Part shown: piece after piece, positions 1,235 to 58,893 of the stretch
How positions within the stretch are numbered: position 1 is the stretch's first letter
Layout of the letters: every line of letters begins with the position of its first letter
Virus record (IMG/VR): IMGVR_UViG_3300043411_000921
Location: 62,001-126,000 of that record
Length of the DNA: 64,000 nt
Strand: one strand, 5' to 3'
Position numbers and translations under genes: made by a program
The notes under the pieces: model-generated
Told to the model about the DNA's origin: nothing
The model's input: only the letters and a program-made list of their open reading frames with translations
Databases searched by the model: none

Positions 1235-2465
1235 TCTTATGTTGTAACACACTCTTCCAGGTTGATTTCAGAGATTCCTTTACAAAATGCTTGATCGTTC
1301 TTTCATTGACTTGGTTTGATGCCATGTCAAAGATTTTCTCATAGGTGAAGCCTGGATTGGCACGCAGAATTTCATTCTTCTGGTAGTAGTCAAACACACT
1401 CTTGAGACGCTCGTAAATGTCTGCGGGTGGATTTGGAAGGGTGGCGGAATCAACCTGATCCTTCAACACAGCTTCATGACCATTGGTGTAATAACTCTTG
1501 CCATTTGGAAGCTGGAGTAGGAAGTAAGCGTCATAAGCAAAACCGCTTGTTGAGGGTTTCTGAATCCTTTGAAACTTGACAGGATTCAGAAGTGCTTTCA
1601 GCTTCAAAGCTGTTGACTTGTTGTTGTATGCGTCAATCGGAGCATCAAGAACCTTGGAAAGATCAACAACATAGTCGAGGTATTCATCTTTTGGTTCTGT
1701 GCTGCCTTGCCCTTCAATCCCGGAGATTCTTTTCTCTGTTGGGGAATAAGTCGCAACGACATGAGGAGTTCCCTTGGGATCAAACAAGCTGATTATTGTT
1801 CGTTTTGGGTCAGTTCCCATAACGCCCACACTTCCACAATTTTTCATCTTCTTCCCAAGAATCTCGCACTTGTCCCCGGCATCAATCCACTTCCAGCCGT
1901 TTCCGTAAGTTTTGATCGGTGTTTTGTCAGAGAAAAGGAATTTCTCTTCGTATTTGTCACTGGCTTTTTCATAAGCCAACCTGGAATATGGAGCAAGATC
2001 GGTAAGCTTCCCGGAAACAATGTCTCTGACTAGTGGTCTTCCAAAAAACAGTTCCTTGAAAAACTCATCAGCGATGTATCCCTTTATCCTTGTCAGTTGG
2101 ATGCCGGGATCATCCTTCTCATCAAAGGAAGCAAAATCAAGTCGATCCCGAATTTCATTGTATTGCTCCAGCGAAATCCTTCCCTCGGCAAATGATTTGG
2201 TAGCATCATAAAGCCTTGCCAACACAACCGCGTTCGCCTTCTCAAAACCATGAGAAGCATTTCTCCACCAATTCTCATCTTCTGGGTTGTGTGCATTGGT
2301 TTCTTTGTACCATTTCGCAAGCAATGGTGCCTTCTTTCCAAACTTCTCATAGAAGAGCGAAGCGATGACCTCTGGGTATCCCAGCTTCATCAGCATCTGC
2401 TTTGATTCAAAAAGAATGTCTTGGGAAGGAGAAGGGGTGGAGAAAAGGAGGGAGATAAGTTTCAT
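1218..2465 (-). CDS. PcfJ-like domain protein (possible internal virion protein)
   Basis: ILGKKMKNCG...IISLFDPKGTPHVVATY...ISGIEGQGSTEP resembles the PcfJ-like C-terminal domain; start MKLISLLF at 2465 with TATTTA upstream. Confidence 0.5.
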   Translation of the reverse strand: MKLISLLFSTPSPSQDILFESKQMLMKLGYPEVIASLFYEKFGKKAPLLAKWYKETNAHNPEDENWWRNASHGFEKANAVVLARLYDATKSFAEGRISLEQYNEIRDRLDFASFDEKDDPGIQLTRIKGYIADEFFKELFFGRPLVRDIVSGKLTDLAPYSRLAYEKASDKYEEKFLFSDKTPIKTYGNGWKWIDAGDKCEILGKKMKNCGSVGVMGTDPKRTIISLFDPKGTPHVVATYSPTEKRISGIEGQGSTEPKDEYLDYVVDLSKVLDAPIDAYNNKSTALKLKALLNPVKFQRIQKPSTSGFAYDAYFLLQLPNGKSYYTNGHEAVLKDQVDSATLPNPPADIYERLKSVFDYYQKNEILRANPGFTYEKIFDMASNQVNERTIKHFVKESLKSTWKSVLQHKNDKHS

Positions 2466-2507
2466 TGGTGTTGAGCAGTAAATAACCACATAACAAGCCT
2501 TTGATCT

Positions 2508-2813
2508 TTATTCGTCTTCTGTTGAAGTTTCGACTTTCAAGAAGATTGCAGGATTCCCAGCAAAGTTAACAAAATCACCTTCTGGACCAAGTGCTGATAC
2601 CTTCACCCGTGTTGTCACTGGGCCAGTGCGGACAATGTGAGATTCTCCAGTAAGAGAGTAAAGCATCCTTGCGTCTTGTTCCGACTGAAAGGTTGAACTC
2701 AACAGAAGGAAAGATACTTTCTTTTCCCAATATTTGGAAGGACCAGAACAAAGATCGGGAAATCCATAGTCAATCTGGAAAAGAGTTCCAGGAACAAATT
2801 CATCGTGCTTCAT
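2508..2813 (-). CDS. Hypothetical protein
   Basis: 101-aa ORF, ATGA-coupled to the upstream minus-strand gene. Confidence 0.5.
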   Translation of the reverse strand: MKHDEFVPGTLFQIDYGFPDLCSGPSKYWEKKVSFLLLSSTFQSEQDARMLYSLTGESHIVRTGPVTTRVKVSALGPEGDFVNFAGNPAIFLKVETSTEDE

Positions 2814-3145
2814 TTTTGATCTCCCTGTTCCGTGTCACACACTTTAAGGCACACAACCAAGTCCATACAAGTGAAAACCTTTCCTCTGGCATTTAACCCT
2901 TTGAACCACACCAAAGGATTTGATTGATGATCCAACCCATCATCACTGACTCTGTATTCAATCAAAGACAGAAACAGGAAAGGTTCTTCGTAAGCTGGGA
3001 AGTCTCCTCTTCCCGCTGACAAAACGTTGTAGGAAGTCAAACCACCAGAAAACTTTTGGAGATATACAAGGGCACCTGGAACCAGGGTTTTGATGTTTGC
3101 TGTCTTGGCCGCAAACGCGGGGGATTTTTTTGATGTGGTTCTCAC
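2810..3145 (-). CDS. Hypothetical protein
   Basis: 111-aa ORF in the tightly packed minus-strand run. Confidence 0.5.
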   Translation of the reverse strand: MRTTSKKSPAFAAKTANIKTLVPGALVYLQKFSGGLTSYNVLSAGRGDFPAYEEPFLFLSLIEYRVSDDGLDHQSNPLVWFKGLNARGKVFTCMDLVVCLKVCDTEQGDQK

Positions 3146-3786: not shown

Positions 3787-4207
3787 CCAGTTTCCTAAAA
3801 CCCATCACAACGGCATCAGTCCAAACCTCAAACTCCCATCCTTTTCCTTCTTTGATGATCCAGGAACGGACAGCAGCATTTTTCAGCATGACCTTTTTGG
3901 TTGCGAGCTTGTCTTGTCTTTTGACTTCAACAATAACGGTTCTACCTGACTTATAGCGGACCAGAAAGTCTGGGTAGTAGGTGTGACCCTTACCTGCCAT
4001 CACATAAGGCACCATAAGGCTCTCATATTCATACGAGACCACTTCTGGATTATTGTCCAGAAACTCAGCGACCGTCTTCTCCCAGCCCGAACGATAATGA
4101 ATCGGCGCAGCACACTTCGGAGAGTGATGGATTCCTGTTTTGTAGTGCTTCCGTTTCCGTCTCTTCTTTGATAAAGTCGTGATTTTCTTTGTTCTCAATT
4201 TCAACAA
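3761..4207 (-). CDS. T4 gp4-like head-completion / TnsA N-terminal PD-(D/E)XK nuclease
   Basis: YRSGWE...EVVSYEYESLMVPY...YYPDFLV...IVEVK. Confidence 0.7.
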   Translation of the reverse strand: MLKLRTKKITTLSKKRRKRKHYKTGIHHSPKCAAPIHYRSGWEKTVAEFLDNNPEVVSYEYESLMVPYVMAGKGHTYYPDFLVRYKSGRTVIVEVKRQDKLATKKVMLKNAAVRSWIIKEGKGWEFEVWTDAVVMGFRKLVEAKKAGC

Positions 4208-5258: not shown

Positions 5259-5278
5259 GACCCTTGTCTCATCCCTCG

Positions 5279-5317
5279 TTAGTGGAAGATAACCAGAAGA
5301 GGGATCCAAGAGAGGGA
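5279..5317 (+). repeat. Dispersed repeat, copy 1 (intergenic)
   Basis: TTAGTGGAAGATAACCAGAAGAGGGATCCAAGAGAGGGA; 31 bp identical to 20716-20746 and 36/37 to 27850-27886. Confidence 0.9.
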
Positions 5318-19313: not shown

Positions 19314-19958
19314 ATGCCAGAAAACAAACAATGGGCAACAAAAGAGGTAGCAGTTCAACACGGTTATCTCTCCCCACCTTCCCAACCCCTTCCCAGCCAT
19401 CTAGCAGCAATCCAAGCAATCAAACCATTCCTTCTTCAACTTCGCAAGTCTGATAAAGATAAACTCTACGTCAGTGACTTGGGCTGTGGAAATGGAAGAA
19501 TGATCCTTGCTCTCGAACAAGTGCTTGGTCCTTCTGTTCCATTTGGTTATGTCGGATACGATTTCAACGAATCTTGCTTGGAGGAAGCGAGAAGGAATTT
19601 CCCAGATCGCTTTTTCATGACAATGGATTTGGATGCTTATGATGGTATGGCCCCAACCCATTCAGATTTGGTTATCCTTGACAGCACCTTGTCGATGGTA
19701 GAAAGACCCAAAGAACTCCTCCTCGGGCTTCTAAAAGCCAACAGAGCGGTTCTGGTGGAGCGTATCAGAACCGGAGAAAAAACAGTCAGAGAAGAATATG
19801 TTTGGGGAGGAATGACTCAGCCATCAGTCAACTGGGCATTCCACCCTTCCTTCTTCTTTGAAGTTGCCAATGAATCAGGTTGCATGATCGCTCACAGAAG
19901 CGACACACGAATCCTTTTTGTGAAAGATGAAGACGAAGAAAACAGCAATGATGAATAA
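19314..19958 (+). CDS. Class I SAM-dependent methyltransferase
   Basis: VSDLGCGNGRM, YVGYDFN. Confidence 0.8.
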   Translation: MPENKQWATKEVAVQHGYLSPPSQPLPSHLAAIQAIKPFLLQLRKSDKDKLYVSDLGCGNGRMILALEQVLGPSVPFGYVGYDFNESCLEEARRNFPDRFFMTMDLDAYDGMAPTHSDLVILDSTLSMVERPKELLLGLLKANRAVLVERIRTGEKTVREEYVWGGMTQPSVNWAFHPSFFFEVANESGCMIAHRSDTRILFVKDEDEENSNDE

Positions 19959-20871
19959 CAATCAGACAACAACAATCAGTGTGATCGGGAATGGATTTGT
20001 GGGTGGCGCAGTTGCCAATGGCTTCTCAAGGCTCAATCCAAAGGTTTACGACATTGATCCGAAAAGATCAACGTGCTCCCTAACAGAAGCTCTTGAATCA
20101 AAATTCATCTTTGTCTGTCTTCCAACCCCAATGGTAAGTGCAGAAGGTGGAGAAGCAAATCTCTCCATCATCGAATCCTTCTTTCAACAAGCATTCCAAC
20201 ATTCCATCAATCCCTCTTCTGTCTTTGTCATCAAATCAACAGTTCCAGTAGGAACAACCAAAAGACTTCAGAAACAATTCCCTGGTTTGAGGTTGGTTCA
20301 CAATCCAGAGTTCCTGACAGCAGCAAGGGCCAACCTGGATTTCATCAATGCAGACAGAACTGTTTTGGGTGGTGATGACCAGGATGCCCTTCAATCGCTC
20401 CAGGAGCTTTATGCGGGCGAGTTCCCTCATGTTCCTACCCTTACCATGTCCAGCACCGACAGCGAGCTTGTAAAATACTCTGCGAACTGTTTCCTGGCAA
20501 CCAAGACCATGTTCTTCAACGAGATCAAATTCCTCGCTGAGAAAATGGGTGCAACCTATGAGAACGTTGTCGCGGGAGTTGTCTCCGACAAAAGAATTGG
20601 TCCGAGTCACACAAAAGTTCCCGGACCTGATGGAGACTACGGGTTTGGTGGTACCTGTTTCCCCAAAGACATCAATGCCCTTGTTTCAACGATTGAAAGT
20701 TGTCAAGAAGATTGCTTAGTGGAAGATAACCAGAAGAGGGATCCAAAAGGGACTCATATAGTTCCTTCACCTTCGTCTAAGATTTTCAAAGCTGTCTGGG
20801 AGAGGAACAAGGAAGTTAGGAAGAACTGGGATTGGGCATCCAGTCCATCTGCCGTGAAAGGTCTGTCGTGA
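19948..20871 (+). CDS. ugd: UDP-glucose/GDP-mannose 6-dehydrogenase, short form lacking the C-terminal domain
   Basis: VIGNGFVG, VCLPTP, IKSTV, NPEFL, ELVKYSANCFLA, GFGGTCFPKD; carries repeat copy 2 near the C-terminus. Confidence 0.85.
   Translation: MMNNNQTTTISVIGNGFVGGAVANGFSRLNPKVYDIDPKRSTCSLTEALESKFIFVCLPTPMVSAEGGEANLSIIESFFQQAFQHSINPSSVFVIKSTVPVGTTKRLQKQFPGLRLVHNPEFLTAARANLDFINADRTVLGGDDQDALQSLQELYAGEFPHVPTLTMSSTDSELVKYSANCFLATKTMFFNEIKFLAEKMGATYENVVAGVVSDKRIGPSHTKVPGPDGDYGFGGTCFPKDINALVSTIESCQEDCLVEDNQKRDPKGTHIVPSPSSKIFKAVWERNKEVRKNWDWASSPSAVKGLS
20716..20746 (+). repeat. Dispersed repeat, copy 2 (in frame in the dehydrogenase)
   Basis: TTAGTGGAAGATAACCAGAAGAGGGATCCAA, encoding LVEDNQKRDP. 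Confidence 0.9.
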
Positions 20872-21117
20872 AAGTCAAGACGGCACTGCAATCCAAAACC
20901 GTACTCGAAAGACTACTATCATAAAGTCAAAGGCATTCCCGCCAAAGAAGTCTGGAAAAGGGACAAACAAAGAGTCAAAGCCTTGAAAGCTCTTGGTTAT
21001 TCAGTCTTCGTTGTTTGGGAAAATGATTTCAAAGATGAGCGAACTAAGACACTGGAAGGTGTCAAAGAATTTCTAGGGAAAGAGAATGAATCAACAACAA
21101 CTTCAACAGCCTGTTAG
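20872..21117 (+). pseudogene. 5'-truncated Vsr/EDxHD-like endonuclease remnant
   Basis: HCNPKPYSKDYYHKVKGIPAKEVWKRDKQRVKALKALGYSVFVVWENDFK; no in-frame start before the motif; the frame is closed upstream by the ugd TGA. Confidence 0.7.
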
Positions 21118-22649
21118 GAAAAACAAGATCCTGGTATTGAGCGACCATCCATTAAACTGACTTGTGACAGTGGATGTAAAATTGGGTGAATTGCTGGAAA
21201 CTCCTGAGAGCAGCACACGCAACAGCAAAACTGGAAACGGTATGTGCGATTGCAAAAAAGATGTGTTGATTGGACAATCAGCAGCCAAGCTCCTGTCTGG
21301 AAACAGTGGAGAAGGTTCAACGACTACGGTTAGCCTAAAAGCTCTTGCTCATGGCGATGATCCGACAGCGCCCAGCAATTCGACAATCGAATTGATGATA
21401 TAGTCTGTTCGTTGGTGAAAATCAGCGAGTAAACGTGTGTACTTCGGGTGTTGGTACCCAAAGCCGCTTTCTTATTCATGGTCTTGTAGCAACGGGAAGA
21501 TATTCGTTCCGTTGTCTTGGAGGAGCGATCAAACACCCGAACTATGATCCAATCGTAGTAAACCCAGATTTCATCATCAAACCTGTTGATGGCTTCGGAG
21601 ACAGGAATATGATCAGGAACCTCCTGATCAATGAAAGACCAGACGCGGTTCTACTGTTCACAGATCCAAGACAGTTTATGTGGCTTTGGGAAATGGAAGA
21701 TGAGATTCATCAGGTTTGCCCTATCGCTTATTGGCACGTCTGGGACAATGATCCATACCCTGCATTCAACGATGTTTGGTATCACTCAACAGACCTGATC
21801 AACTGTCTTTCTCACAAAACCTACGAGCTTGTCAAACCTCATTTTCCAGAGAGAACAAACTACATTCCTCACGCCTTTCCGAAAGAGGTTTATCATCCTC
21901 TTCCAGCAGAGACAGTAAAACAACTGAGGAGTGTGAATTACAAGGAGCGTGCTGACTGGTTCATTGGAGCTTGGATCAACAGGAATGCAACCAGGAAGAT
22001 GCCAAACGATGTCTTGATGTCTTGGAAGATGTTTTTGGATGATCTGGAGAAGAAGGAAGGTCACAGGAAGGCAATGCTCGTGATGCACACTGACCCACAA
22101 GACACAGAAGGACCAAACCTTTTTGCAACCGTCGAGAACCTTGGATTGACCAGTAATGTTGTGTTCTCAACTCAAAAGGTTGATTTCAACGACATGAATG
22201 CGCTTTACAACTCAGTTGATTTTATTGTGAACGTGTCGAAGGCAGAAGGGTTTGGATTGGCAACCTTGTCTGGTTTGATGGTTGGGAAACCGATCATTGC
22301 ACTGAAGACTGGGGGAATGACACGTCAGGTTGTGGATTATCGAGATGGAACAGAGCATGGGGTTGCCATTGATCCAGCTTGCAGAGTTCTTGTTGGCTCT
22401 CAGATGGTTCCTTACATCTTCGACGATCACTTCAAACATGAAGATTTGTCAGCAGCCTTTCTAAAGGTTTATTCCATGTCTCCAGAAGAGAAAGAAGTGC
22501 TTACCAAAAAGAACATTGCTTATGCTGAACACGAGTTCGGTTATGAGAAGATGATCTCTGAGTGGGATAGGACTCTGGATAAAGTGATCAGAGATTTCAA
22601 GAGCAACCCACCAAAACGCTGGACATGCTCCAAACTCAACAACAAGTGA
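21086..22649 (+). CDS. GT4 glycosyltransferase, spliced: join(21086..21152,21436..22649), 426 aa
   Basis: Exon 1 gives MNQQQLQQPVRKNKILVLSDHP; splicing restores SDHPLCTSGVGTQ; later EGFGL, GKPII motifs. Confidence 0.85.
21153..21435 (+). ncRNA. Group I self-splicing intron, no internal ORF (283 nt)
   Basis: P AATTGCTGGAAA 21189, Q AATCAGCAG 21276, R GTTCAACGACTA 21315, S ATGATATAGTCT 21395; P1 CATCCAT/GTGGATG with U-G at the splice site; P9 hairpin 21409-21428; terminal G 21435; frame restored. Confidence 0.92.
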
Positions 22650-22660
22650 ATAACAACACA

Positions 22661-23878
22661 ATGAACACTTCATCCACAAAGAAAACTGTTCTGCTTAGGG
22701 GTCCATTGTTGGTACATGCCGGTTACGGCGTGCATACCCGTCAAATTGCTCGTTGGCTGTTTCGTGTTGCATCCGAACAACACGATCTTGACATTACAAC
22801 CGAACCACTTCCTTGGGGAGACACACACCTTCTCGTAGACCCAGAAGCAGAAGATGGACTCATTGGACAAATCCTTCAAGCTTCGGGAAACAAGAAGTCC
22901 TTCTACGATGTAACAATCCAAGTCCAGCTTCCAAACGAATGGAATCCTTTCTTGGGAAATTTTAACGTTGGTGTGACTGCTGGAGTTGAGACAGATAAGT
23001 GCAATCCAGCTTGGATTGATTGCATCAACAGGATGGACATGGTTGTTGTTCCCAGCACCTTCACCAAAGAAACCTTCATGGCAACAGGTGAAATCAAAGT
23101 TCCTGTTGCTGTGATCCCAGAAGCGTTTCCAGACGCAATGCAAGACCAGAACCAACTTATTCCAGAGGATCCAGACTTGGATTTGGGGTTGACAACAAAG
23201 TTCAATTTGTTGGTTGTTGGTCAGTTGACAGGAACTAATCCTGAGAATGACAGGAAGAACCTTCCTTACACTCTCAAGTGGATTGCTGAAACTTTTGCAG
23301 GCAACAAAGATATTGGTGTGATTGTCAAGACGAATGCTGGAGCACAGACACAACTTGACAAGAAGAACGTTGAAGGAATTTTCAAGAAGCTTGTTACCGA
23401 GATTCAGCCTGCTGGTGTTCCTGGTCCAACCTTTTATCTTCTTCATGGTCACATGACTGATGAAGAGATGAACAGGCTGTATCGGCACAAGGAAATTGCA
23501 GCCCTGATTTCTTTGACACACGGCGAAGGTTATGGACTTCCCATTCTTGAAGCTGCTGCTTGCGGTCTTCCAGTGATTGCAACAAACTGGAGTGGGCATC
23601 TTGAATTCCTGAAGCATGGAAAGTTTATTCCGGTTGACAGGATGTTGGGAGAGGTTCCAGCTTCCAGGGTCGATGGTCAAATCTTCCTTGCTGGAATGAA
23701 GTGGGCCAACCCAGTTGAGATTGACGTGAAGAGAAGGTTGAGGAAGTTTTACGAGTCTTCTTCTATGCCAAAGCAATGGGCGAGGGAATTGGCTCGTGTG
23801 ATTCAGAAGGAATACTCGTTCGACGCGGTATCCAGTATTTACTCAAAAGCCCTTGGTGGCGTTTTGGGGAGTTCCTGA
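22661..23878 (+). CDS. GT4 glycosyltransferase
   Basis: GYGVHTR, GVTAGVETD, VVVPSTFTK, RKNL, THGEGYGLPILEAAACGLPVIATNWSGHLEFL. Confidence 0.85.
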   Translation: MNTSSTKKTVLLRGPLLVHAGYGVHTRQIARWLFRVASEQHDLDITTEPLPWGDTHLLVDPEAEDGLIGQILQASGNKKSFYDVTIQVQLPNEWNPFLGNFNVGVTAGVETDKCNPAWIDCINRMDMVVVPSTFTKETFMATGEIKVPVAVIPEAFPDAMQDQNQLIPEDPDLDLGLTTKFNLLVVGQLTGTNPENDRKNLPYTLKWIAETFAGNKDIGVIVKTNAGAQTQLDKKNVEGIFKKLVTEIQPAGVPGPTFYLLHGHMTDEEMNRLYRHKEIAALISLTHGEGYGLPILEAAACGLPVIATNWSGHLEFLKHGKFIPVDRMLGEVPASRVDGQIFLAGMKWANPVEIDVKRRLRKFYESSSMPKQWARELARVIQKEYSFDAVSSIYSKALGGVLGSS

Positions 23879-27250: not shown

Positions 27251-28012
27251 ATGTCACAAGATGACTTGGCAAGGATCAGAGCAGAATCAACTGCTCAAAC
27301 CTTCAGGGAAACACAAAACACTGCAAATGTTGCTGCGAACACAGCAAAACTTGCCGCTGTTTCCACTGCAATAACAGCACTCCCAGCACCCGTGAATGCA
27401 GCAACAAGGATTTTGGGTGATGGTCTTTACGCAGCTTTCAAATTTCCTGTGACTGGAGTGAGGCAACCCGCTCCAGTTTCAGCAGATCCAATCAAACTGA
27501 TGGCTTACGCAATGGCTTTCTCTATCCTGAAAGCCTTGTGGTGTTTTATCAAGTCGCTCTTGAACCCTTTGCCATTCATTGGATCTTTTTTCCCTCTGTG
27601 CCCAAATGACCCTGACGGGGTTGGGTCTGATAGTTCTGACCCGGACAACATCAAGCTGAACCAAGCGAGCATGGCATTTGCTGGCGCTGTGGGGAATATA
27701 GAGAGCCTCCAAGGGGTCCAAGCACCTCCGGGACCATCCGGGGATTTCGGAGGCTCTATTAATCCTCCTGGAGCGATTCTCGATGCCGGGGAATCTTTTG
27801 AGGAGTACATTTCAAGAACTGCTGGTTTTTCAGGGGTTACATCTTCGGGAGTGGAGGATAACCAGAAGAGGGATCCAAGAGAGGGATTAATACAGATTGT
27901 TCCCACTTCTCAAACTCCGACAATCAATCCACCTGCTGAACCTGAGAGTTCCAGGGGATCTGGGTACGGGGAAGAATTTGCGAATGATTTGCGGAGAGGA
28001 TTTGGTCTATGA
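27251..28012 (+). CDS. Hypothetical baseplate-region protein
   Basis: 253-aa ORF; low-complexity C-terminal half contains repeat copy 3. Confidence 0.55.
   Translation: MSQDDLARIRAESTAQTFRETQNTANVAANTAKLAAVSTAITALPAPVNAATRILGDGLYAAFKFPVTGVRQPAPVSADPIKLMAYAMAFSILKALWCFIKSLLNPLPFIGSFFPLCPNDPDGVGSDSSDPDNIKLNQASMAFAGAVGNIESLQGVQAPPGPSGDFGGSINPPGAILDAGESFEEYISRTAGFSGVTSSGVEDNQKRDPREGLIQIVPTSQTPTINPPAEPESSRGSGYGEEFANDLRRGFGL
27850..27886 (+). repeat. Dispersed repeat, copy 3 (in frame)
   Basis: AGTGGAGGATAACCAGAAGAGGGATCCAAGAGAGGGA, encoding VEDNQKRDPREG. Confidence 0.9.
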
Positions 28013-57718: not shown

Positions 57719-58893
57719 TTATGGTTTGGGATGGTAAAGTTTTCGTCGATGGCCATAAAGAAACGAGTTTCTGGGAAGCCTTCAATCTCAACGCTTCCAA
57801 CTTTAGCCAAGGCAAAAAGACCATTCAATGAGTTTGGGTGACAGTCCAGGACCACCGCATCGTGGTTGAAAAACAATGGAAAAACTGTGTTGTGGAGCCT
57901 TCCTTGTTCTTCTAAGTATCTGATAACATTAGTAAATCCGAGAAAAGAGATGTCAGCAGCGGTGCTTTGGATGTAGTGGTTGACGAGAGTATGCCTAGTC
58001 TCCGTTGCAATCCTCCGACCATAGAAATTCGTAATAAACTTTCTATTGCTGGTTTCCCATTCGATCTTTAGTTTTTCTTGAAGAAGATCCAGCCCGAAAA
58101 ATTCTCTTGCGCTGGAGATGAGATCTTCAATTTCTGATTGAGAGAGGCCGAATGGGAGGAGTTGCTGATTGAGTGCATCTAGTCCGATCCCATAAAGCTG
58201 GGAGATGACTGCCTTCTTCACGACCTCTCTGGGAAGGTCTGAGTTGAAATCGCTGTATATGTCTGGATTGCATCCCTTGGATCCCTCTTCTGGTAATCCT
58301 CCACAAAGCAACTCTCGTGCCACCCTCGCAACCCTTGGTTCCAAGCACTTATAGTCCAGTGCCACAACCAAACCACCCTCATCCTTCCACCTGGACTCCA
58401 GCAAACCCCTATAAACCTTTGGGAGATGAAGCAAGGCAGGCCCAGCAACCGTGTGAAGCCTTCCAGTGACTGTGGTCACACGATCATATTCCACAACCCT
58501 TGCAAACCCATTCGAATCAGGCTTGAAAGTCCCAGTGTGCCCCGTCTTATCCAACCCAGAAAACCTTTCAAAAGCATCCAGGTTGATTTTGGCAGGACGC
58601 AGTTGATCAAAAACCCAAGAGGTCGGTTCCCAGACTTTTTGAAGGTAACTCGTGTCGAGGGATGCAACCTCCCGATGGTAGTCTTGGACATGCCCCGTAA
58701 TCGCTCTATACGCCTTATCTGGGCAGGCAAATTGCCAGGGCACCCTGGACCCTTGGAGAGATGGTGCAAGCCCCCTATAAGCCTTCTGGATGGCTTCTGG
58801 TGCAAGGGGGGGTTCGGGGATGAGAAAGAGTTTACTGATGAGAAATGGATCCATATACTGGCGAGGGGTAACACTCAGAAAATCAAGTGGCAA
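57715..58893 (-). CDS. polA: Family A DNA polymerase, polymerase domain only
   Basis: TVTGRL, motif A LDYKCLEPR, motif B REVVKKAVISQLYG, NHYIQSTAAD, motif C NHDAVVL. Confidence 0.85.
   Translation of the reverse strand: MPLDFLSVTPRQYMDPFLISKLFLIPEPPLAPEAIQKAYRGLAPSLQGSRVPWQFACPDKAYRAITGHVQDYHREVASLDTSYLQKVWEPTSWVFDQLRPAKINLDAFERFSGLDKTGHTGTFKPDSNGFARVVEYDRVTTVTGRLHTVAGPALLHLPKVYRGLLESRWKDEGGLVVALDYKCLEPRVARVARELLCGGLPEEGSKGCNPDIYSDFNSDLPREVVKKAVISQLYGIGLDALNQQLLPFGLSQSEIEDLISSAREFFGLDLLQEKLKIEWETSNRKFITNFYGRRIATETRHTLVNHYIQSTAADISFLGFTNVIRYLEEQGRLHNTVFPLFFNHDAVVLDCHPNSLNGLFALAKVGSVEIEGFPETRFFMAIDENFTIPNHK
58273..58304 (-). repeat. Dispersed repeat, copy 4 (in polA, different frame)
   Basis: Minus strand GTGGAGGATTACCAGAAGAGGGATCCAAGGGA; 28/29 match to copy 3; read as CGGLPEEGSKG. 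Confidence 0.9.

What the first reader, a model, noticed from the sequence alone, without database searches (positions are those of the whole stretch)
20872..21117. Decayed Vsr/EDxHD-like endonuclease flush against the intron-containing gene
Only the C-terminal part remains (HCNP...VWKRD...LGYSVFVVWENDF). It lacks a start codon and overlaps exon 1 of the GT4 gene. A free-standing endonuclease beside an ORF-less intron is the established collaborative-homing arrangement (e.g. the cyanophage S-PM2 psbA intron). Inference: this is the fossil partner that mobilised the intron.
Basis: partly seen in the sequence, partly recalled or inferred. Interest (0 to 1): 0.6.

Follow-up and report, generated by a model that had tools for sequence, protein, structure and literature searches.

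The report
Deleted homing endonuclease beside an intron
The stretch is the leftover tail of a selfish DNA-cutting gene: related phages carry it intact, frameshifted or not at all at the same spot, so together they show the life cycle of a nuclease and a self-splicing intron that spread as partners.

Summary
Window 20872-21117 is the C-terminal quarter of a Vsr-like (EDxHD-type) homing endonuclease.

It is not simply missing a start codon. A 667-nt internal deletion between two short imperfect repeats removed all the zinc-finger DNA-binding modules and two near-invariant acidic residues of the nuclease core, one of which aligns with Vsr's catalytic Asp51.

Close relatives hold the same gene at the same position, between the UDP-glucose dehydrogenase-like (UGDH-like) gene and the glycosyltransferase (GT4) gene, in four states:
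- intact, 304 aa
- carrying a 1-nt frameshift
- internally deleted (this window, and independent metagenome contigs)
- absent, together with the intron

Across about 40 related loci the endonuclease family almost always sits directly 5' of this GT4 gene. The long subtype always comes with the ORF-less group I intron, and loci with neither are common. The intron keeps its ribozyme structure: 37 of 77 pairs show compensatory changes.

In several relatives a relic copy of GT4 exon 1 lies upstream of the endonuclease and ends within about 12 nt of the intron insertion site. That fits cleavage at that site.

The "fossil partner / collaborative homing" reading is therefore supported by comparison. 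Cleavage and splicing remain untested. S-PM2's F-CphI belongs to a different nuclease family.

The parts
19927..20871 (+). UDP-glucose/GDP-mannose dehydrogenase-like (UGDH-like) gene. It is the upstream neighbour, and its TGA stop (20869-20871) overlaps the remnant start codon of the endonuclease.
   Evidence: Pfam PF03721 6e-21 and PF00984 2.5e-19. 96% aa identity to the L002 orthologue, dN/dS 0.06.
20868..20885 (+). 5' remnant of the endonuclease gene: start codon (GTG here, ATG in L002 and L041) plus five codons (MKVKTA). It is out of frame with the 3' remnant.
   Evidence: Alignment with L002 4318-4335. The same ATGA-type overlap with the UGDH stop occurs in L002, L041 and L044.
20885..20886 (.). 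Junction of the 667-nt internal deletion (relative to L002 4336-5002). It lies between imperfect direct repeats, GGCAACTTGCAATC and GGCACTGTAATC, which are the Cys-Asn codons of the first zinc finger and of the HCNP motif.
   Evidence: The junction is spanned by independent contigs.
20884..21117 (+). 3' remnant of the endonuclease gene (the finding, 20872-21117, is this frame). It covers the HCNP loop, the W..D..R helix, the last beta-strand (VFVVWE) and the C-terminal helices of a Vsr-like nuclease domain. D208, E219 and three of the four core strands are missing (L005 numbering).
   Evidence: 84% aa identity to the L002 C-terminus. dN/dS against L002 is 0.14.
21086..21152 (+). GT4 glycosyltransferase exon 1 (MNQQQLQQPVRKNKILVLSDHP + first base of Leu). 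It overlaps the endonuclease remnant by 32 nt.
   Evidence: Intron-less relatives read ..KILMLSDHPLCTSGVG.. without interruption.
21153..21435 (+). ORF-less group I intron, 283 nt. P1 pairs 21147-21153 with 21169-21175. The U21152-G21170 wobble marks the 5' splice site, and the terminal G is at 21435.
   Evidence: RF00028 84 bits, E=4e-21. P1 appears in the MFE fold. 37 of 77 consensus pairs show compensatory changes across 8 homologous introns, including an exon/guide pair in P1.
21436..22649 (+). GT4 glycosyltransferase exon 2.
   Evidence: Pfam Glyco_trans_1_4 and Glycos_transf_1. 25 related viral loci.

Best explanation
The stretch is the dead remnant of a free-standing homing endonuclease gene (HEG).

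The intact protein is about 300 aa. It has two or three CxxC...CxxxC zinc-finger modules, a NUMOD3-like motif and a C-terminal Vsr-like (EDxHD-type) nuclease domain. Its gene sits immediately 5' of a conserved phage GT4 glycosyltransferase gene, and its 3' end contains the GT4 start codon and exon 1.

Inferred mechanism. When intact, the enzyme cuts GT4 alleles that lack the element, at or within a few bases of codon ~23 (..CATCCAT|TGTGTAC..). Repair from the donor then copies the endonuclease gene, its attached exon 1 and the ORF-less group I intron inserted at that same site. The intron splits the target in the carrier genome and so protects it. In return the endonuclease gives the intron mobility. 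This is collaborative (trans) homing.

Once the element was fixed in the window's lineage the endonuclease was no longer needed. A 667-nt microhomology-mediated deletion removed its DNA-binding region and half its active site. The last ~250 nt survive because they carry the translation start and exon 1 of GT4. The intron survives because GT4 needs it to splice.

Shown here: the homology, the deletion, the allelic series, the linkage with GT4 and with the intron, and the conservation of intron structure.

Inferred only: the cleavage site, protection by the intron, and the direction of mobility.
For: 1. Family. A profile of 25 members matches E. coli Vsr (1CW0, E=0.003) across the whole nuclease domain. 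An AlphaFold model of the intact L005 protein (pLDDT 82.6) matches Vsr 1cw0 (target-normalised TM 0.60), the I-Bth0305I catalytic domain 3r3p (0.74) and the DUF559 protein 3hrl (0.74). A distant homologue in Aeromonas phage Aes123 lies between split-intein halves of gp43. That is the arrangement in which the EDxHD family was first described (PMC3239194).

2. Allelic series at one position, UGDH | HEG | GT4:
- intact 304-aa gene plus intron: L041-L043
- 1-nt-deletion frameshift allele plus intron: L002 and L044-L047, at least 5 assemblies
- 667-nt deletion plus intron: the window and independent contigs
- neither element: L004

3. Linkage. In GT4 loci fetched without regard to the endonuclease, the intron is found only in the window, L002, L005, L006, L007 and probably L018, which cannot be assessed because it sits at a contig end. 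Exactly those loci carry the HEG upstream. Eighteen intron-less loci have none within 4 kb. HEG homologues fetched independently lie 5' of this GT4 in L029-L032, L034-L039, L041-L047 and L049. Every long-type copy has the intron.

4. Patchiness. On the GT4 tree, intron+HEG occurs in at least 4 separate well-supported clades, each with an empty or intron-less sister.

5. Footprint. A relic of the native exon 1 lies upstream of the HEG in L005/L006, L007, L029, L034, L035, L036 and L049. It stops being homologous within about 12 nt of the insertion site. It carries stops or frameshifts in L029 and L036. In L034 it matches the exon 1 of the empty sister L019.

6. The intron is maintained: RF00028 at 84-101 bits in all carriers, and 37 of 77 pairs compensated, including the exon/guide pair in P1.

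7. No intact copy lies elsewhere in the 241-kb record.
Against: - No biochemical or transcript evidence exists. No spliced junction was seen in the contigs of RNA-type runs, though contigs cannot show absence.
- The short HEG subtype sits at the same place next to uninterrupted GT4 genes. The intron is therefore not required for the endonuclease to persist, and the two could be independent parasites of one conserved site.
- The relic-exon junctions share a conserved leader motif and may descend from a single old event. They give few independent footprints of the cut site.
- No gradient of co-converted exon sequence is visible between the window and the empty relative L004.
- The counts contain near-duplicate loci. 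Only about 4 phylogenetically independent contrasts support the intron / long-HEG association.
- One distant homologue (L033, 31% identity) is not next to a GT4 gene.
Confidence: 0.7

Rival explanations
1. The remnant is a decayed homing endonuclease, but it was an independent parasite of the GT4 5' region (intron-less homing of a free-standing HEG). It never mobilised the intron. The intron arrived separately, or is inherited vertically, at a conserved and attractive site.
For: Short-type HEGs occupy the same position beside uninterrupted GT4 genes. HEG proteins are far more diverged than GT4 or the intron: about 41% aa between L002 and L005, against 76% for GT4.
Against: Every long-type HEG found comes with the intron, and every assessable intron comes with a HEG or its remnant, in at least 4 separate GT4 clades. 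The relic exon 1 ends at the intron insertion site.
Confidence: 0.2
2. The stretch is still a functional coding piece. It would be either a small 44-aa protein from TTG 20983, or a C-terminal extension of the UGDH-like protein made by read-through of its TGA, since the remnant is in the same frame.
For: The frame is open for 81 codons, lies in frame with UGDH, and shows dN/dS of 0.14 against L002. A gene caller called the 44-aa ORF.
Against: The low dN/dS is expected if the deletion is recent and the L002 copy is or was functional. The piece keeps only one of the four core beta-strands and lacks D208 and E219. UGDH ends at the same residue in relatives that have a full HEG or none. Being in frame has a 1-in-3 chance. 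Nothing in the genome suggests TGA is reassigned.
Confidence: 0.04
3. It is the remnant of a housekeeping Vsr-type mismatch-repair nuclease or a restriction-associated nuclease, not of a homing endonuclease.
For: The Pfam hits are to MTES_1575 (a restriction-endonuclease-like family) and DUF559. Sources name relatives 'very short patch repair endonuclease'.
Against: The intact relatives carry modular zinc-finger and NUMOD3-like DNA-binding regions shared with phage HNH homing endonucleases (phrog_1271). Their distribution is patchy, they occupy a fixed position next to one target gene, they occur as tandem copies, and they decay repeatedly.
Confidence: 0.03

Closest known systems
Collaborative (trans) homing: F-CphI plus the psbA intron of cyanophage S-PM2 (Zeng, Bonocora & Shub 2009), the T7-like phage case of Bonocora & Shub 2009, and T4 mobE with the defunct I-TevIII nrdB intron (PMC2790892; reviews PMC3984707, PMC2988022)
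   Same: A free-standing HEG lies next to a gene that holds an ORF-less (or defunct-ORF) group I intron. In those systems the endonuclease target coincides with the intron insertion site, the intron protects the carrier, and the endonuclease mobilises the intron. Distribution among relatives is patchy.
   Different: The nuclease here is Vsr-like/EDxHD-type. F-CphI is Endo VII/DHHRN-type (PMC6083498) and mobE is HNH-type. The host gene is a GT4 glycosyltransferase. The HEG lies upstream and its 3' end contains the target gene's start codon and exon 1. Many relatives keep a relic of the native exon 1. Cleavage is untested, and the window copy is dead.
I-Bth0305I and the EDxHD (Vsr-like) homing endonuclease family, including phage Hef and the HEGs of 'fractured' split-intein genes (PMC3239194)
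   Same: A C-terminal Vsr-like nuclease domain (fold match to 3r3p, target-normalised TM 0.74) behind a modular N-terminal DNA-binding region. Phage-borne and associated with a group I intron. A distant homologue (Aes123) lies between split-intein halves.
   Different: I-Bth0305I is encoded inside its intron and binds DNA through NUMOD/HTH-type motifs. This family is free-standing and uses CxxC...CxxxC zinc fingers. No sequence-level hit to 3R3P was obtained. The first 'E' of the composite motif could not be placed.
E. coli Vsr endonuclease (1CW0/1VSR), with Pfam MTES_1575 and DUF559
   Same: The nuclease domain matches at profile level, with D208 aligned to Vsr D51, W225-H226 to W68-H69, and D252 to the Asp of Vsr ..ERD... 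The fold also matches.
   Different: Vsr is a stand-alone mismatch-nicking repair enzyme with no zinc-finger array. This family behaves as a mobile element.
The homing cycle of invasion, fixation, degeneration and loss (Goddard & Burt model, as summarised in PMC3984707)
   Same: Empty, intact, frameshifted and deleted alleles all occur at one locus in closely related genomes.
   Different: Here the nuclease and the intron are separate units. The nuclease decays while the intron, which the host gene needs, is retained.

Membership tests
Vsr-like / EDxHD homing endonucleases | C-terminal nuclease domain with the Vsr fold | tested here: met
   Tested on the intact relatives. Profile against 1CW0 gives E=0.003 over the whole domain. 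Foldseek, target-normalised TM: 3r3p 0.74, 1cw0 0.60, 3hrl 0.74, probability 1.00. The window copy keeps only profile positions 224-289 of 291.
Vsr-like / EDxHD homing endonucleases | Composite catalytic motif E-D-x-H-D (Vsr D51, H64, H69, D97 equal I-Bth0305I D196, N208, H213, D222; PMC3239194) | tested here: inconclusive
   D208, H226 and D252 are nearly invariant in the family and align with Vsr D51, H69 and the ERD Asp. The 'x' position varies (N/M/H), as expected. The leading E could not be assigned; E219 is nearly invariant but aligns with Vsr F62. In the window copy only the H and the last D remain, so the motif is not met there, which fits a dead gene.
Vsr-like / EDxHD homing endonucleases | Site-specific double-strand cleavage next to the intron or intein insertion site | not testable with these tools
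   Only indirect evidence: the relic exon 1 ends within about 12 nt of the insertion site.
Collaborative-homing pair (free-standing HEG plus ORF-less intron) | ORF-less, splicing-competent group I intron in a conserved gene | tested here: met
   RF00028 at 84 bits. 283 nt with no HEG inside. P1 forms with a U-G wobble at the splice site. 37 of 77 pairs are compensated. Splicing itself was not observed.
Collaborative-homing pair (free-standing HEG plus ORF-less intron) | Free-standing HEG adjacent to the intron-containing gene, co-distributed with the intron | tested here: met
   The window copy is a remnant.
Collaborative-homing pair (free-standing HEG plus ORF-less intron) | [quoted passage not shown] | not testable with these tools
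   Needs a cleavage assay on L004-type (empty) and window-type (intron-bearing) DNA.
Pfam MTES_1575 (PF18741) / DUF559 (PF04480) | Score at or above the curated gathering threshold | tested here: not met
   Window fragment: 23.6 bits against 38.2, and 17.8 against 20.6. Among the intact relatives only L007 copy 1 passes DUF559, at 23.1 against 20.6. The family lies at the edge of these models.

The most novel reading that the evidence does not exclude
In this phage group the endonuclease may not be merely 'next to' its target gene. It may travel as a cassette made of a leader motif, the HEG, a replacement exon 1 with its own start codon, and (in long-type copies) the intron, landing inside the GT4 coding sequence at the cut site.

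The cassette would restore the gene by supplying a new 5' end instead of relying on an intron or intein around the HEG. The displaced native exon 1 stays behind as a relic and then serves as the left homology arm for further homing.

Two immunity solutions would coexist. Short-type copies would rely on a variant target sequence. Long-type copies would rely on the intron splitting the rebuilt target.

This would be a natural intermediate series for how free-standing nucleases and introns become partners. It would also include a frameshift allele (0-frame A_AAA_AAG followed by TGA) that could still make full-length enzyme by -1 slippage.
Probability: 0.4. Interest if true: 0.75.

Novelty: new member of a known kind. 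Interest (0 to 1): 0.55.

Why it matters
Only a few collaborative-homing pairs are documented, and each rests on one or two genomes.

This is a candidate case with a different nuclease family (Vsr-like/EDxHD) and a different host gene. Public metagenomes already contain the empty, intact, frameshifted and deleted alleles, plus a sister subtype that manages without the intron.

That makes several questions directly testable with a few synthesised genes and target plasmids:
- how a free-standing nuclease and an ORF-less intron come to share one site
- what protects the carrier genome
- in what order the partners decay

For annotation, it explains three things at once: an otherwise puzzling 44-aa ORF call, a GT4 gene that seems to start with GTG inside an intron, and a missing N-terminus.

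Tried and rejected
- Megablast of 19900-22700 against cultured phages found nothing. The nearest cultured GT4 is only 31% identical, so the phage is uncultured. It occurs in freshwater and wastewater metagenomes.
- phmmer of the intact L005 protein against PDB gave only chance hits. The profile and fold searches were needed.
- The word search with the 81-aa fragment found only the window's own 44-aa ORF. That is uninformative because of the tool's length limits.
- Assembly artefact was rejected: independent contigs span the junction.
- TGA read-through from UGDH, or a reassigned code, was rejected as unsupported. No other code was used in any translation.
- The idea that the L002 frameshift is a homopolymer sequencing error was rejected. 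The missing base lies about 10 nt upstream of the A-run (AAC becomes GC), and the identical allele occurs in at least 5 assemblies.
- A conserved hairpin that sequesters the ribosome-binding site ahead of the HEG is not supported. Only L005 and L035 fold convincingly. What is conserved is a sequence motif, ACTCC.ACTCCACTACTTAT.
- No co-conversion gradient around the insertion site was seen between the window and L004.
- The promoter and terminator scan of 20600-21500 found nothing above chance.
- No spliced 21152>21436 joint was reported in RNA-type runs. Only contigs were available, so this says nothing either way.
- The idea that the HEG in L005/L007 lies inside the intron, using the relic exon 1 as the 5' splice site, was rejected. 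The relics carry stops or frameshifts, mismatch the guide sequence or lack the pairing bases, and a second exon 1 abuts the intron.

The spliced GT4 protein was never searched as a joined sequence. Exon 1 and exon 2 were searched separately by reference, and the joined step was left out.

Full report
**What is in the window**

A UDP-glucose/GDP-mannose dehydrogenase-like (UGDH-like) ORF ends with TGA at 20869-20871. The next 81 codons in the same frame (20872-21117) are open and read ..RHCNPKPY..VWKRDKQR..LGYSVFVVWENDF...

A glycosyltransferase (GT4) gene follows in two exons:
- Exon 1 runs from ATG 21086 to 21152.
- A 283-nt group I intron occupies 21153-21435 (RF00028, 84 bits).
- Exon 2 runs from 21436 to 22649.

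The exons join as ..GAC CAT CCA T|TG TGT ACT.., which reads DHPLCTSG. Intron-less relatives read the same peptide without interruption. P1 pairs 21147-21153 with the guide sequence at 21169-21175. The U21152-G21170 wobble marks the 5' splice site.

**Is the fragment an endonuclease tail?**

Yes.
- Pfam MTES_1575 and DUF559 match only their C-terminal ends, and both fall below the gathering score.
- phrog_22677 matches at positions 283-346 of 353.
- tblastn finds phage proteins annotated as Vsr endonucleases.
- A close relative, L002 (UGDH 96% and GT4 98.5% aa identical), carries a full-size gene between the same two neighbours. Its last 75 residues are 84% identical to the fragment.

**How it decayed**

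Aligning the window with L002 shows one 667-nt internal deletion (L002 4336-5002). Its junction is at window 20885/20886. It lies between two imperfect direct repeats that happen to encode Cys-Asn in the first zinc finger and in the HCNP motif.

The original start codon survives as GTG at 20868, overlapping the UGDH stop (ATG in L002 and L041). Five more codons follow, but they are now out of frame with the tail.

What remains starts at the His of the invariant YWHCNP motif. What is lost:
- all zinc-finger modules;
- the NUMOD3-like motif;
- the nearly invariant D208 and E219 (L005 numbering);
- three of the four core beta-strands of the modelled nuclease domain.

The 241-kb record has no second copy. 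The deletion is real: contigs from independent wastewater and freshwater runs cross the junction without a gap.

dN/dS of the surviving 67 non-overlapping codons against L002 is 0.14, from 15 synonymous and 11 non-synonymous changes. Most of the divergence therefore accumulated under selection, so the deletion is comparatively young.

**What family**

I aligned 25 relatives as A1.
- The A1 profile matches E. coli Vsr (1CW0, E=0.003) along the whole nuclease domain. D208 aligns with Vsr D51, W225-H226 with W68-H69, and D252 with the Asp of ..ERD...
- An AlphaFold model of the intact L005 protein (pLDDT 82.6) finds Vsr, the I-Bth0305I catalytic domain (3r3p, target-normalised TM 0.74) and a DUF559 protein (3hrl).
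- The N-terminal part matches the DNA-binding region of a PHROG of HNH homing endonucleases. It also has a weak NUMOD3 hit.
- A distant homologue in Aeromonas phage Aes123 sits between the split-intein halves of gp43. That is the 'fractured gene' arrangement in which the Vsr-like EDxHD family was discovered (PMC3239194).

'Vsr/EDxHD-like' is therefore a fair name. I could not place the first E of the composite motif.

**The allelic series**

At the identical position (UGDH stop overlapping the HEG start, and the HEG 3' end containing GT4 exon 1) I found four states.
1. An intact 304-aa gene with the intron: L041-L043.
2. A frameshift allele with the intron: L002 and L044-L047, identical in at least five assemblies. 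The missing base is about 10 nt upstream of an A-run. It puts A_AAA_AAG followed by TGA in the zero frame, and a -1 slip there restores ..KKVIEYHGDYWHCNP...
3. The 667-nt deletion with the intron: the window.
4. Neither endonuclease nor intron: L004.

**Linkage with the intron**

I fetched 25 GT4 loci using exon 2 alone.
- The intron occurs in L002, L005, L006 and L007, as in the window, and probably in L018, which sits at a contig end. Exactly these loci have the endonuclease upstream.
- Eighteen loci read ..SDHPLCTSGVG.. without interruption and have no homologue within 4 kb.

Homologues found through the endonuclease itself lie 5' of the same GT4 gene in L029-L032, L034-L039, L041-L047 and L049. 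One 31%-identical protein, in L033, is elsewhere.

Two subtypes appear.
- The long type is 290-307 aa. It includes the window/L002/L041 lineage and always comes with the intron.
- The short type is about 238 aa and forms a monophyletic group nested among the long ones. It sits beside uninterrupted GT4 genes whose sequence just downstream of the site is unusual (for example GVGVMSR instead of GVGVQAR). A separate, deeply divergent 262-aa protein in L032 occupies the same position, and there the difference falls at the site itself (HPLAPSG instead of HPLCTSG).
- L007 has one of each subtype in tandem.

On the GT4 tree, intron+HEG falls in at least four well-supported clades, each with an empty or intron-less sister. 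That is the patchiness expected of a mobile element. It also means only about four independent contrasts support the association.

**A footprint of the insertion site**

In L005/L006, L007, L029, L034, L035, L036 and L049, a second copy of GT4 exon 1 lies upstream of the endonuclease. It has its own start codon.
- It carries stops or frameshifts in L029 and L036.
- In L034 it is clearly the exon 1 of that lineage, as comparison with the empty sister L019 shows.
- It stops being homologous within about 12 nt of the intron insertion site. A conserved leader motif (ACTCC.ACTCCACTACTTAT) then precedes the endonuclease.

The working exon 1 is the one embedded in the endonuclease's 3' end.

[quoted passage not shown] This is inference. 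The junctions share the leader motif and may descend from one old event.

The window/L002/L041 lineage has no relic. There the endonuclease start abuts UGDH.

**The intron is alive**

Eight homologous introns are 71-99% identical. They give a consensus structure in which 37 of 77 pairs show compensatory changes. These include the P1 pair, where the exon's synonymous A/G co-varies with U/C in the guide sequence.

No spliced junction was reported in contigs of RNA-type runs. Contigs cannot show absence.

**Conclusion**

- The decay was an internal deletion.
- The endonuclease is tied primarily to the GT4 5' site and has a subtype that does without the intron.
- S-PM2's F-CphI belongs to the Endo VII/DHHRN family (PMC6083498), so it is an analogue, not a relative.

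Cleavage specificity, protection by the intron and splicing all remain to be tested.

- Read laying was given 2001 letters.
- No alternative genetic code was used.
- The spliced GT4 model was searched exon by exon by reference, and the joined step was left out.
- In one local tree the L002 gene was read through with X at the frameshift.

Noticed in passing
window 5275-5314 (+), 20712-20751 (+), 27844-27883 (+), 58277-58311 (-): A dispersed ~30-35 nt repeat (AGTGGAAGATAACCAGAAGAGGGATCCAA) occurs four times. Three copies lie inside ORFs, not all in the same reading frame (one is inside the UGDH-like gene), and the fourth lies at an ORF boundary. In metagenome contigs this piece has about 3-5 times the depth of its flanks and joins many different flanks. 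It looks like a DNA- or RNA-level element rather than a protein motif.
   Followed up: partly
L002 4960-4980; also L044-L047: The frameshifted endonuclease allele has the classic -1 slippery heptamer A_AAA_AAG in the zero frame, followed directly by TGA. A -1 slip would restore the full-length enzyme. The identical allele occurs in at least 5 assemblies, so it is not a sequencing error. It could be a leaky, attenuated allele rather than a dead one.
   Followed up: partly
L005 2625-2715; L007 1853-1945; L029 ~3874-3960; L034 ~1945-2000; L035 ~1752-1830; L036 ~1014-1080; L049 2907-2955: A relic copy of GT4 exon 1 lies upstream of the endonuclease. It ends near the intron insertion site and is followed by a conserved leader motif, ACTCC.ACTCCACTACTTAT. 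The working exon 1 is a second copy inside the endonuclease's 3' end.
   Followed up: yes
L007 1995-2714 and 2770-3657: Two endonuclease genes of the family stand in tandem, a short type then a long type, ahead of the intron-bearing GT4 gene.
   Followed up: partly
L032 6354-7166: A GIY-YIG protein (270 aa), probably another free-standing homing endonuclease, sits between the GT4 gene and the next glycosyltransferase. L029 and L030 have an unannotated 226-aa ORF at the equivalent place, and L013 has about 1 kb extra there.
   Followed up: no
window 21164-21403 (+): A 79-aa GTG-started ORF spans most of the intron. It is also open in L002, L041 and L044, and gene callers call it. It is absent from L005 and L007. 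It is probably a by-product of the conserved ribozyme sequence, but I did not examine it.
   Followed up: no
window 20869-20872: The endonuclease remnant is in the same reading frame as the UGDH-like gene, separated only by its TGA. I judged this a coincidence (1-in-3 chance). Relatives end UGDH at the same residue.
   Followed up: partly
L048 (Aeromonas phage Aes123, JN377899.1) 2057-3118: A distant homologue annotated 'putative VSR endonuclease' lies between the N- and C-intein halves of a split DNA polymerase gene (gp43B1/gp43B2). This ties the family to the 'fractured gene' endonucleases.
   Followed up: partly
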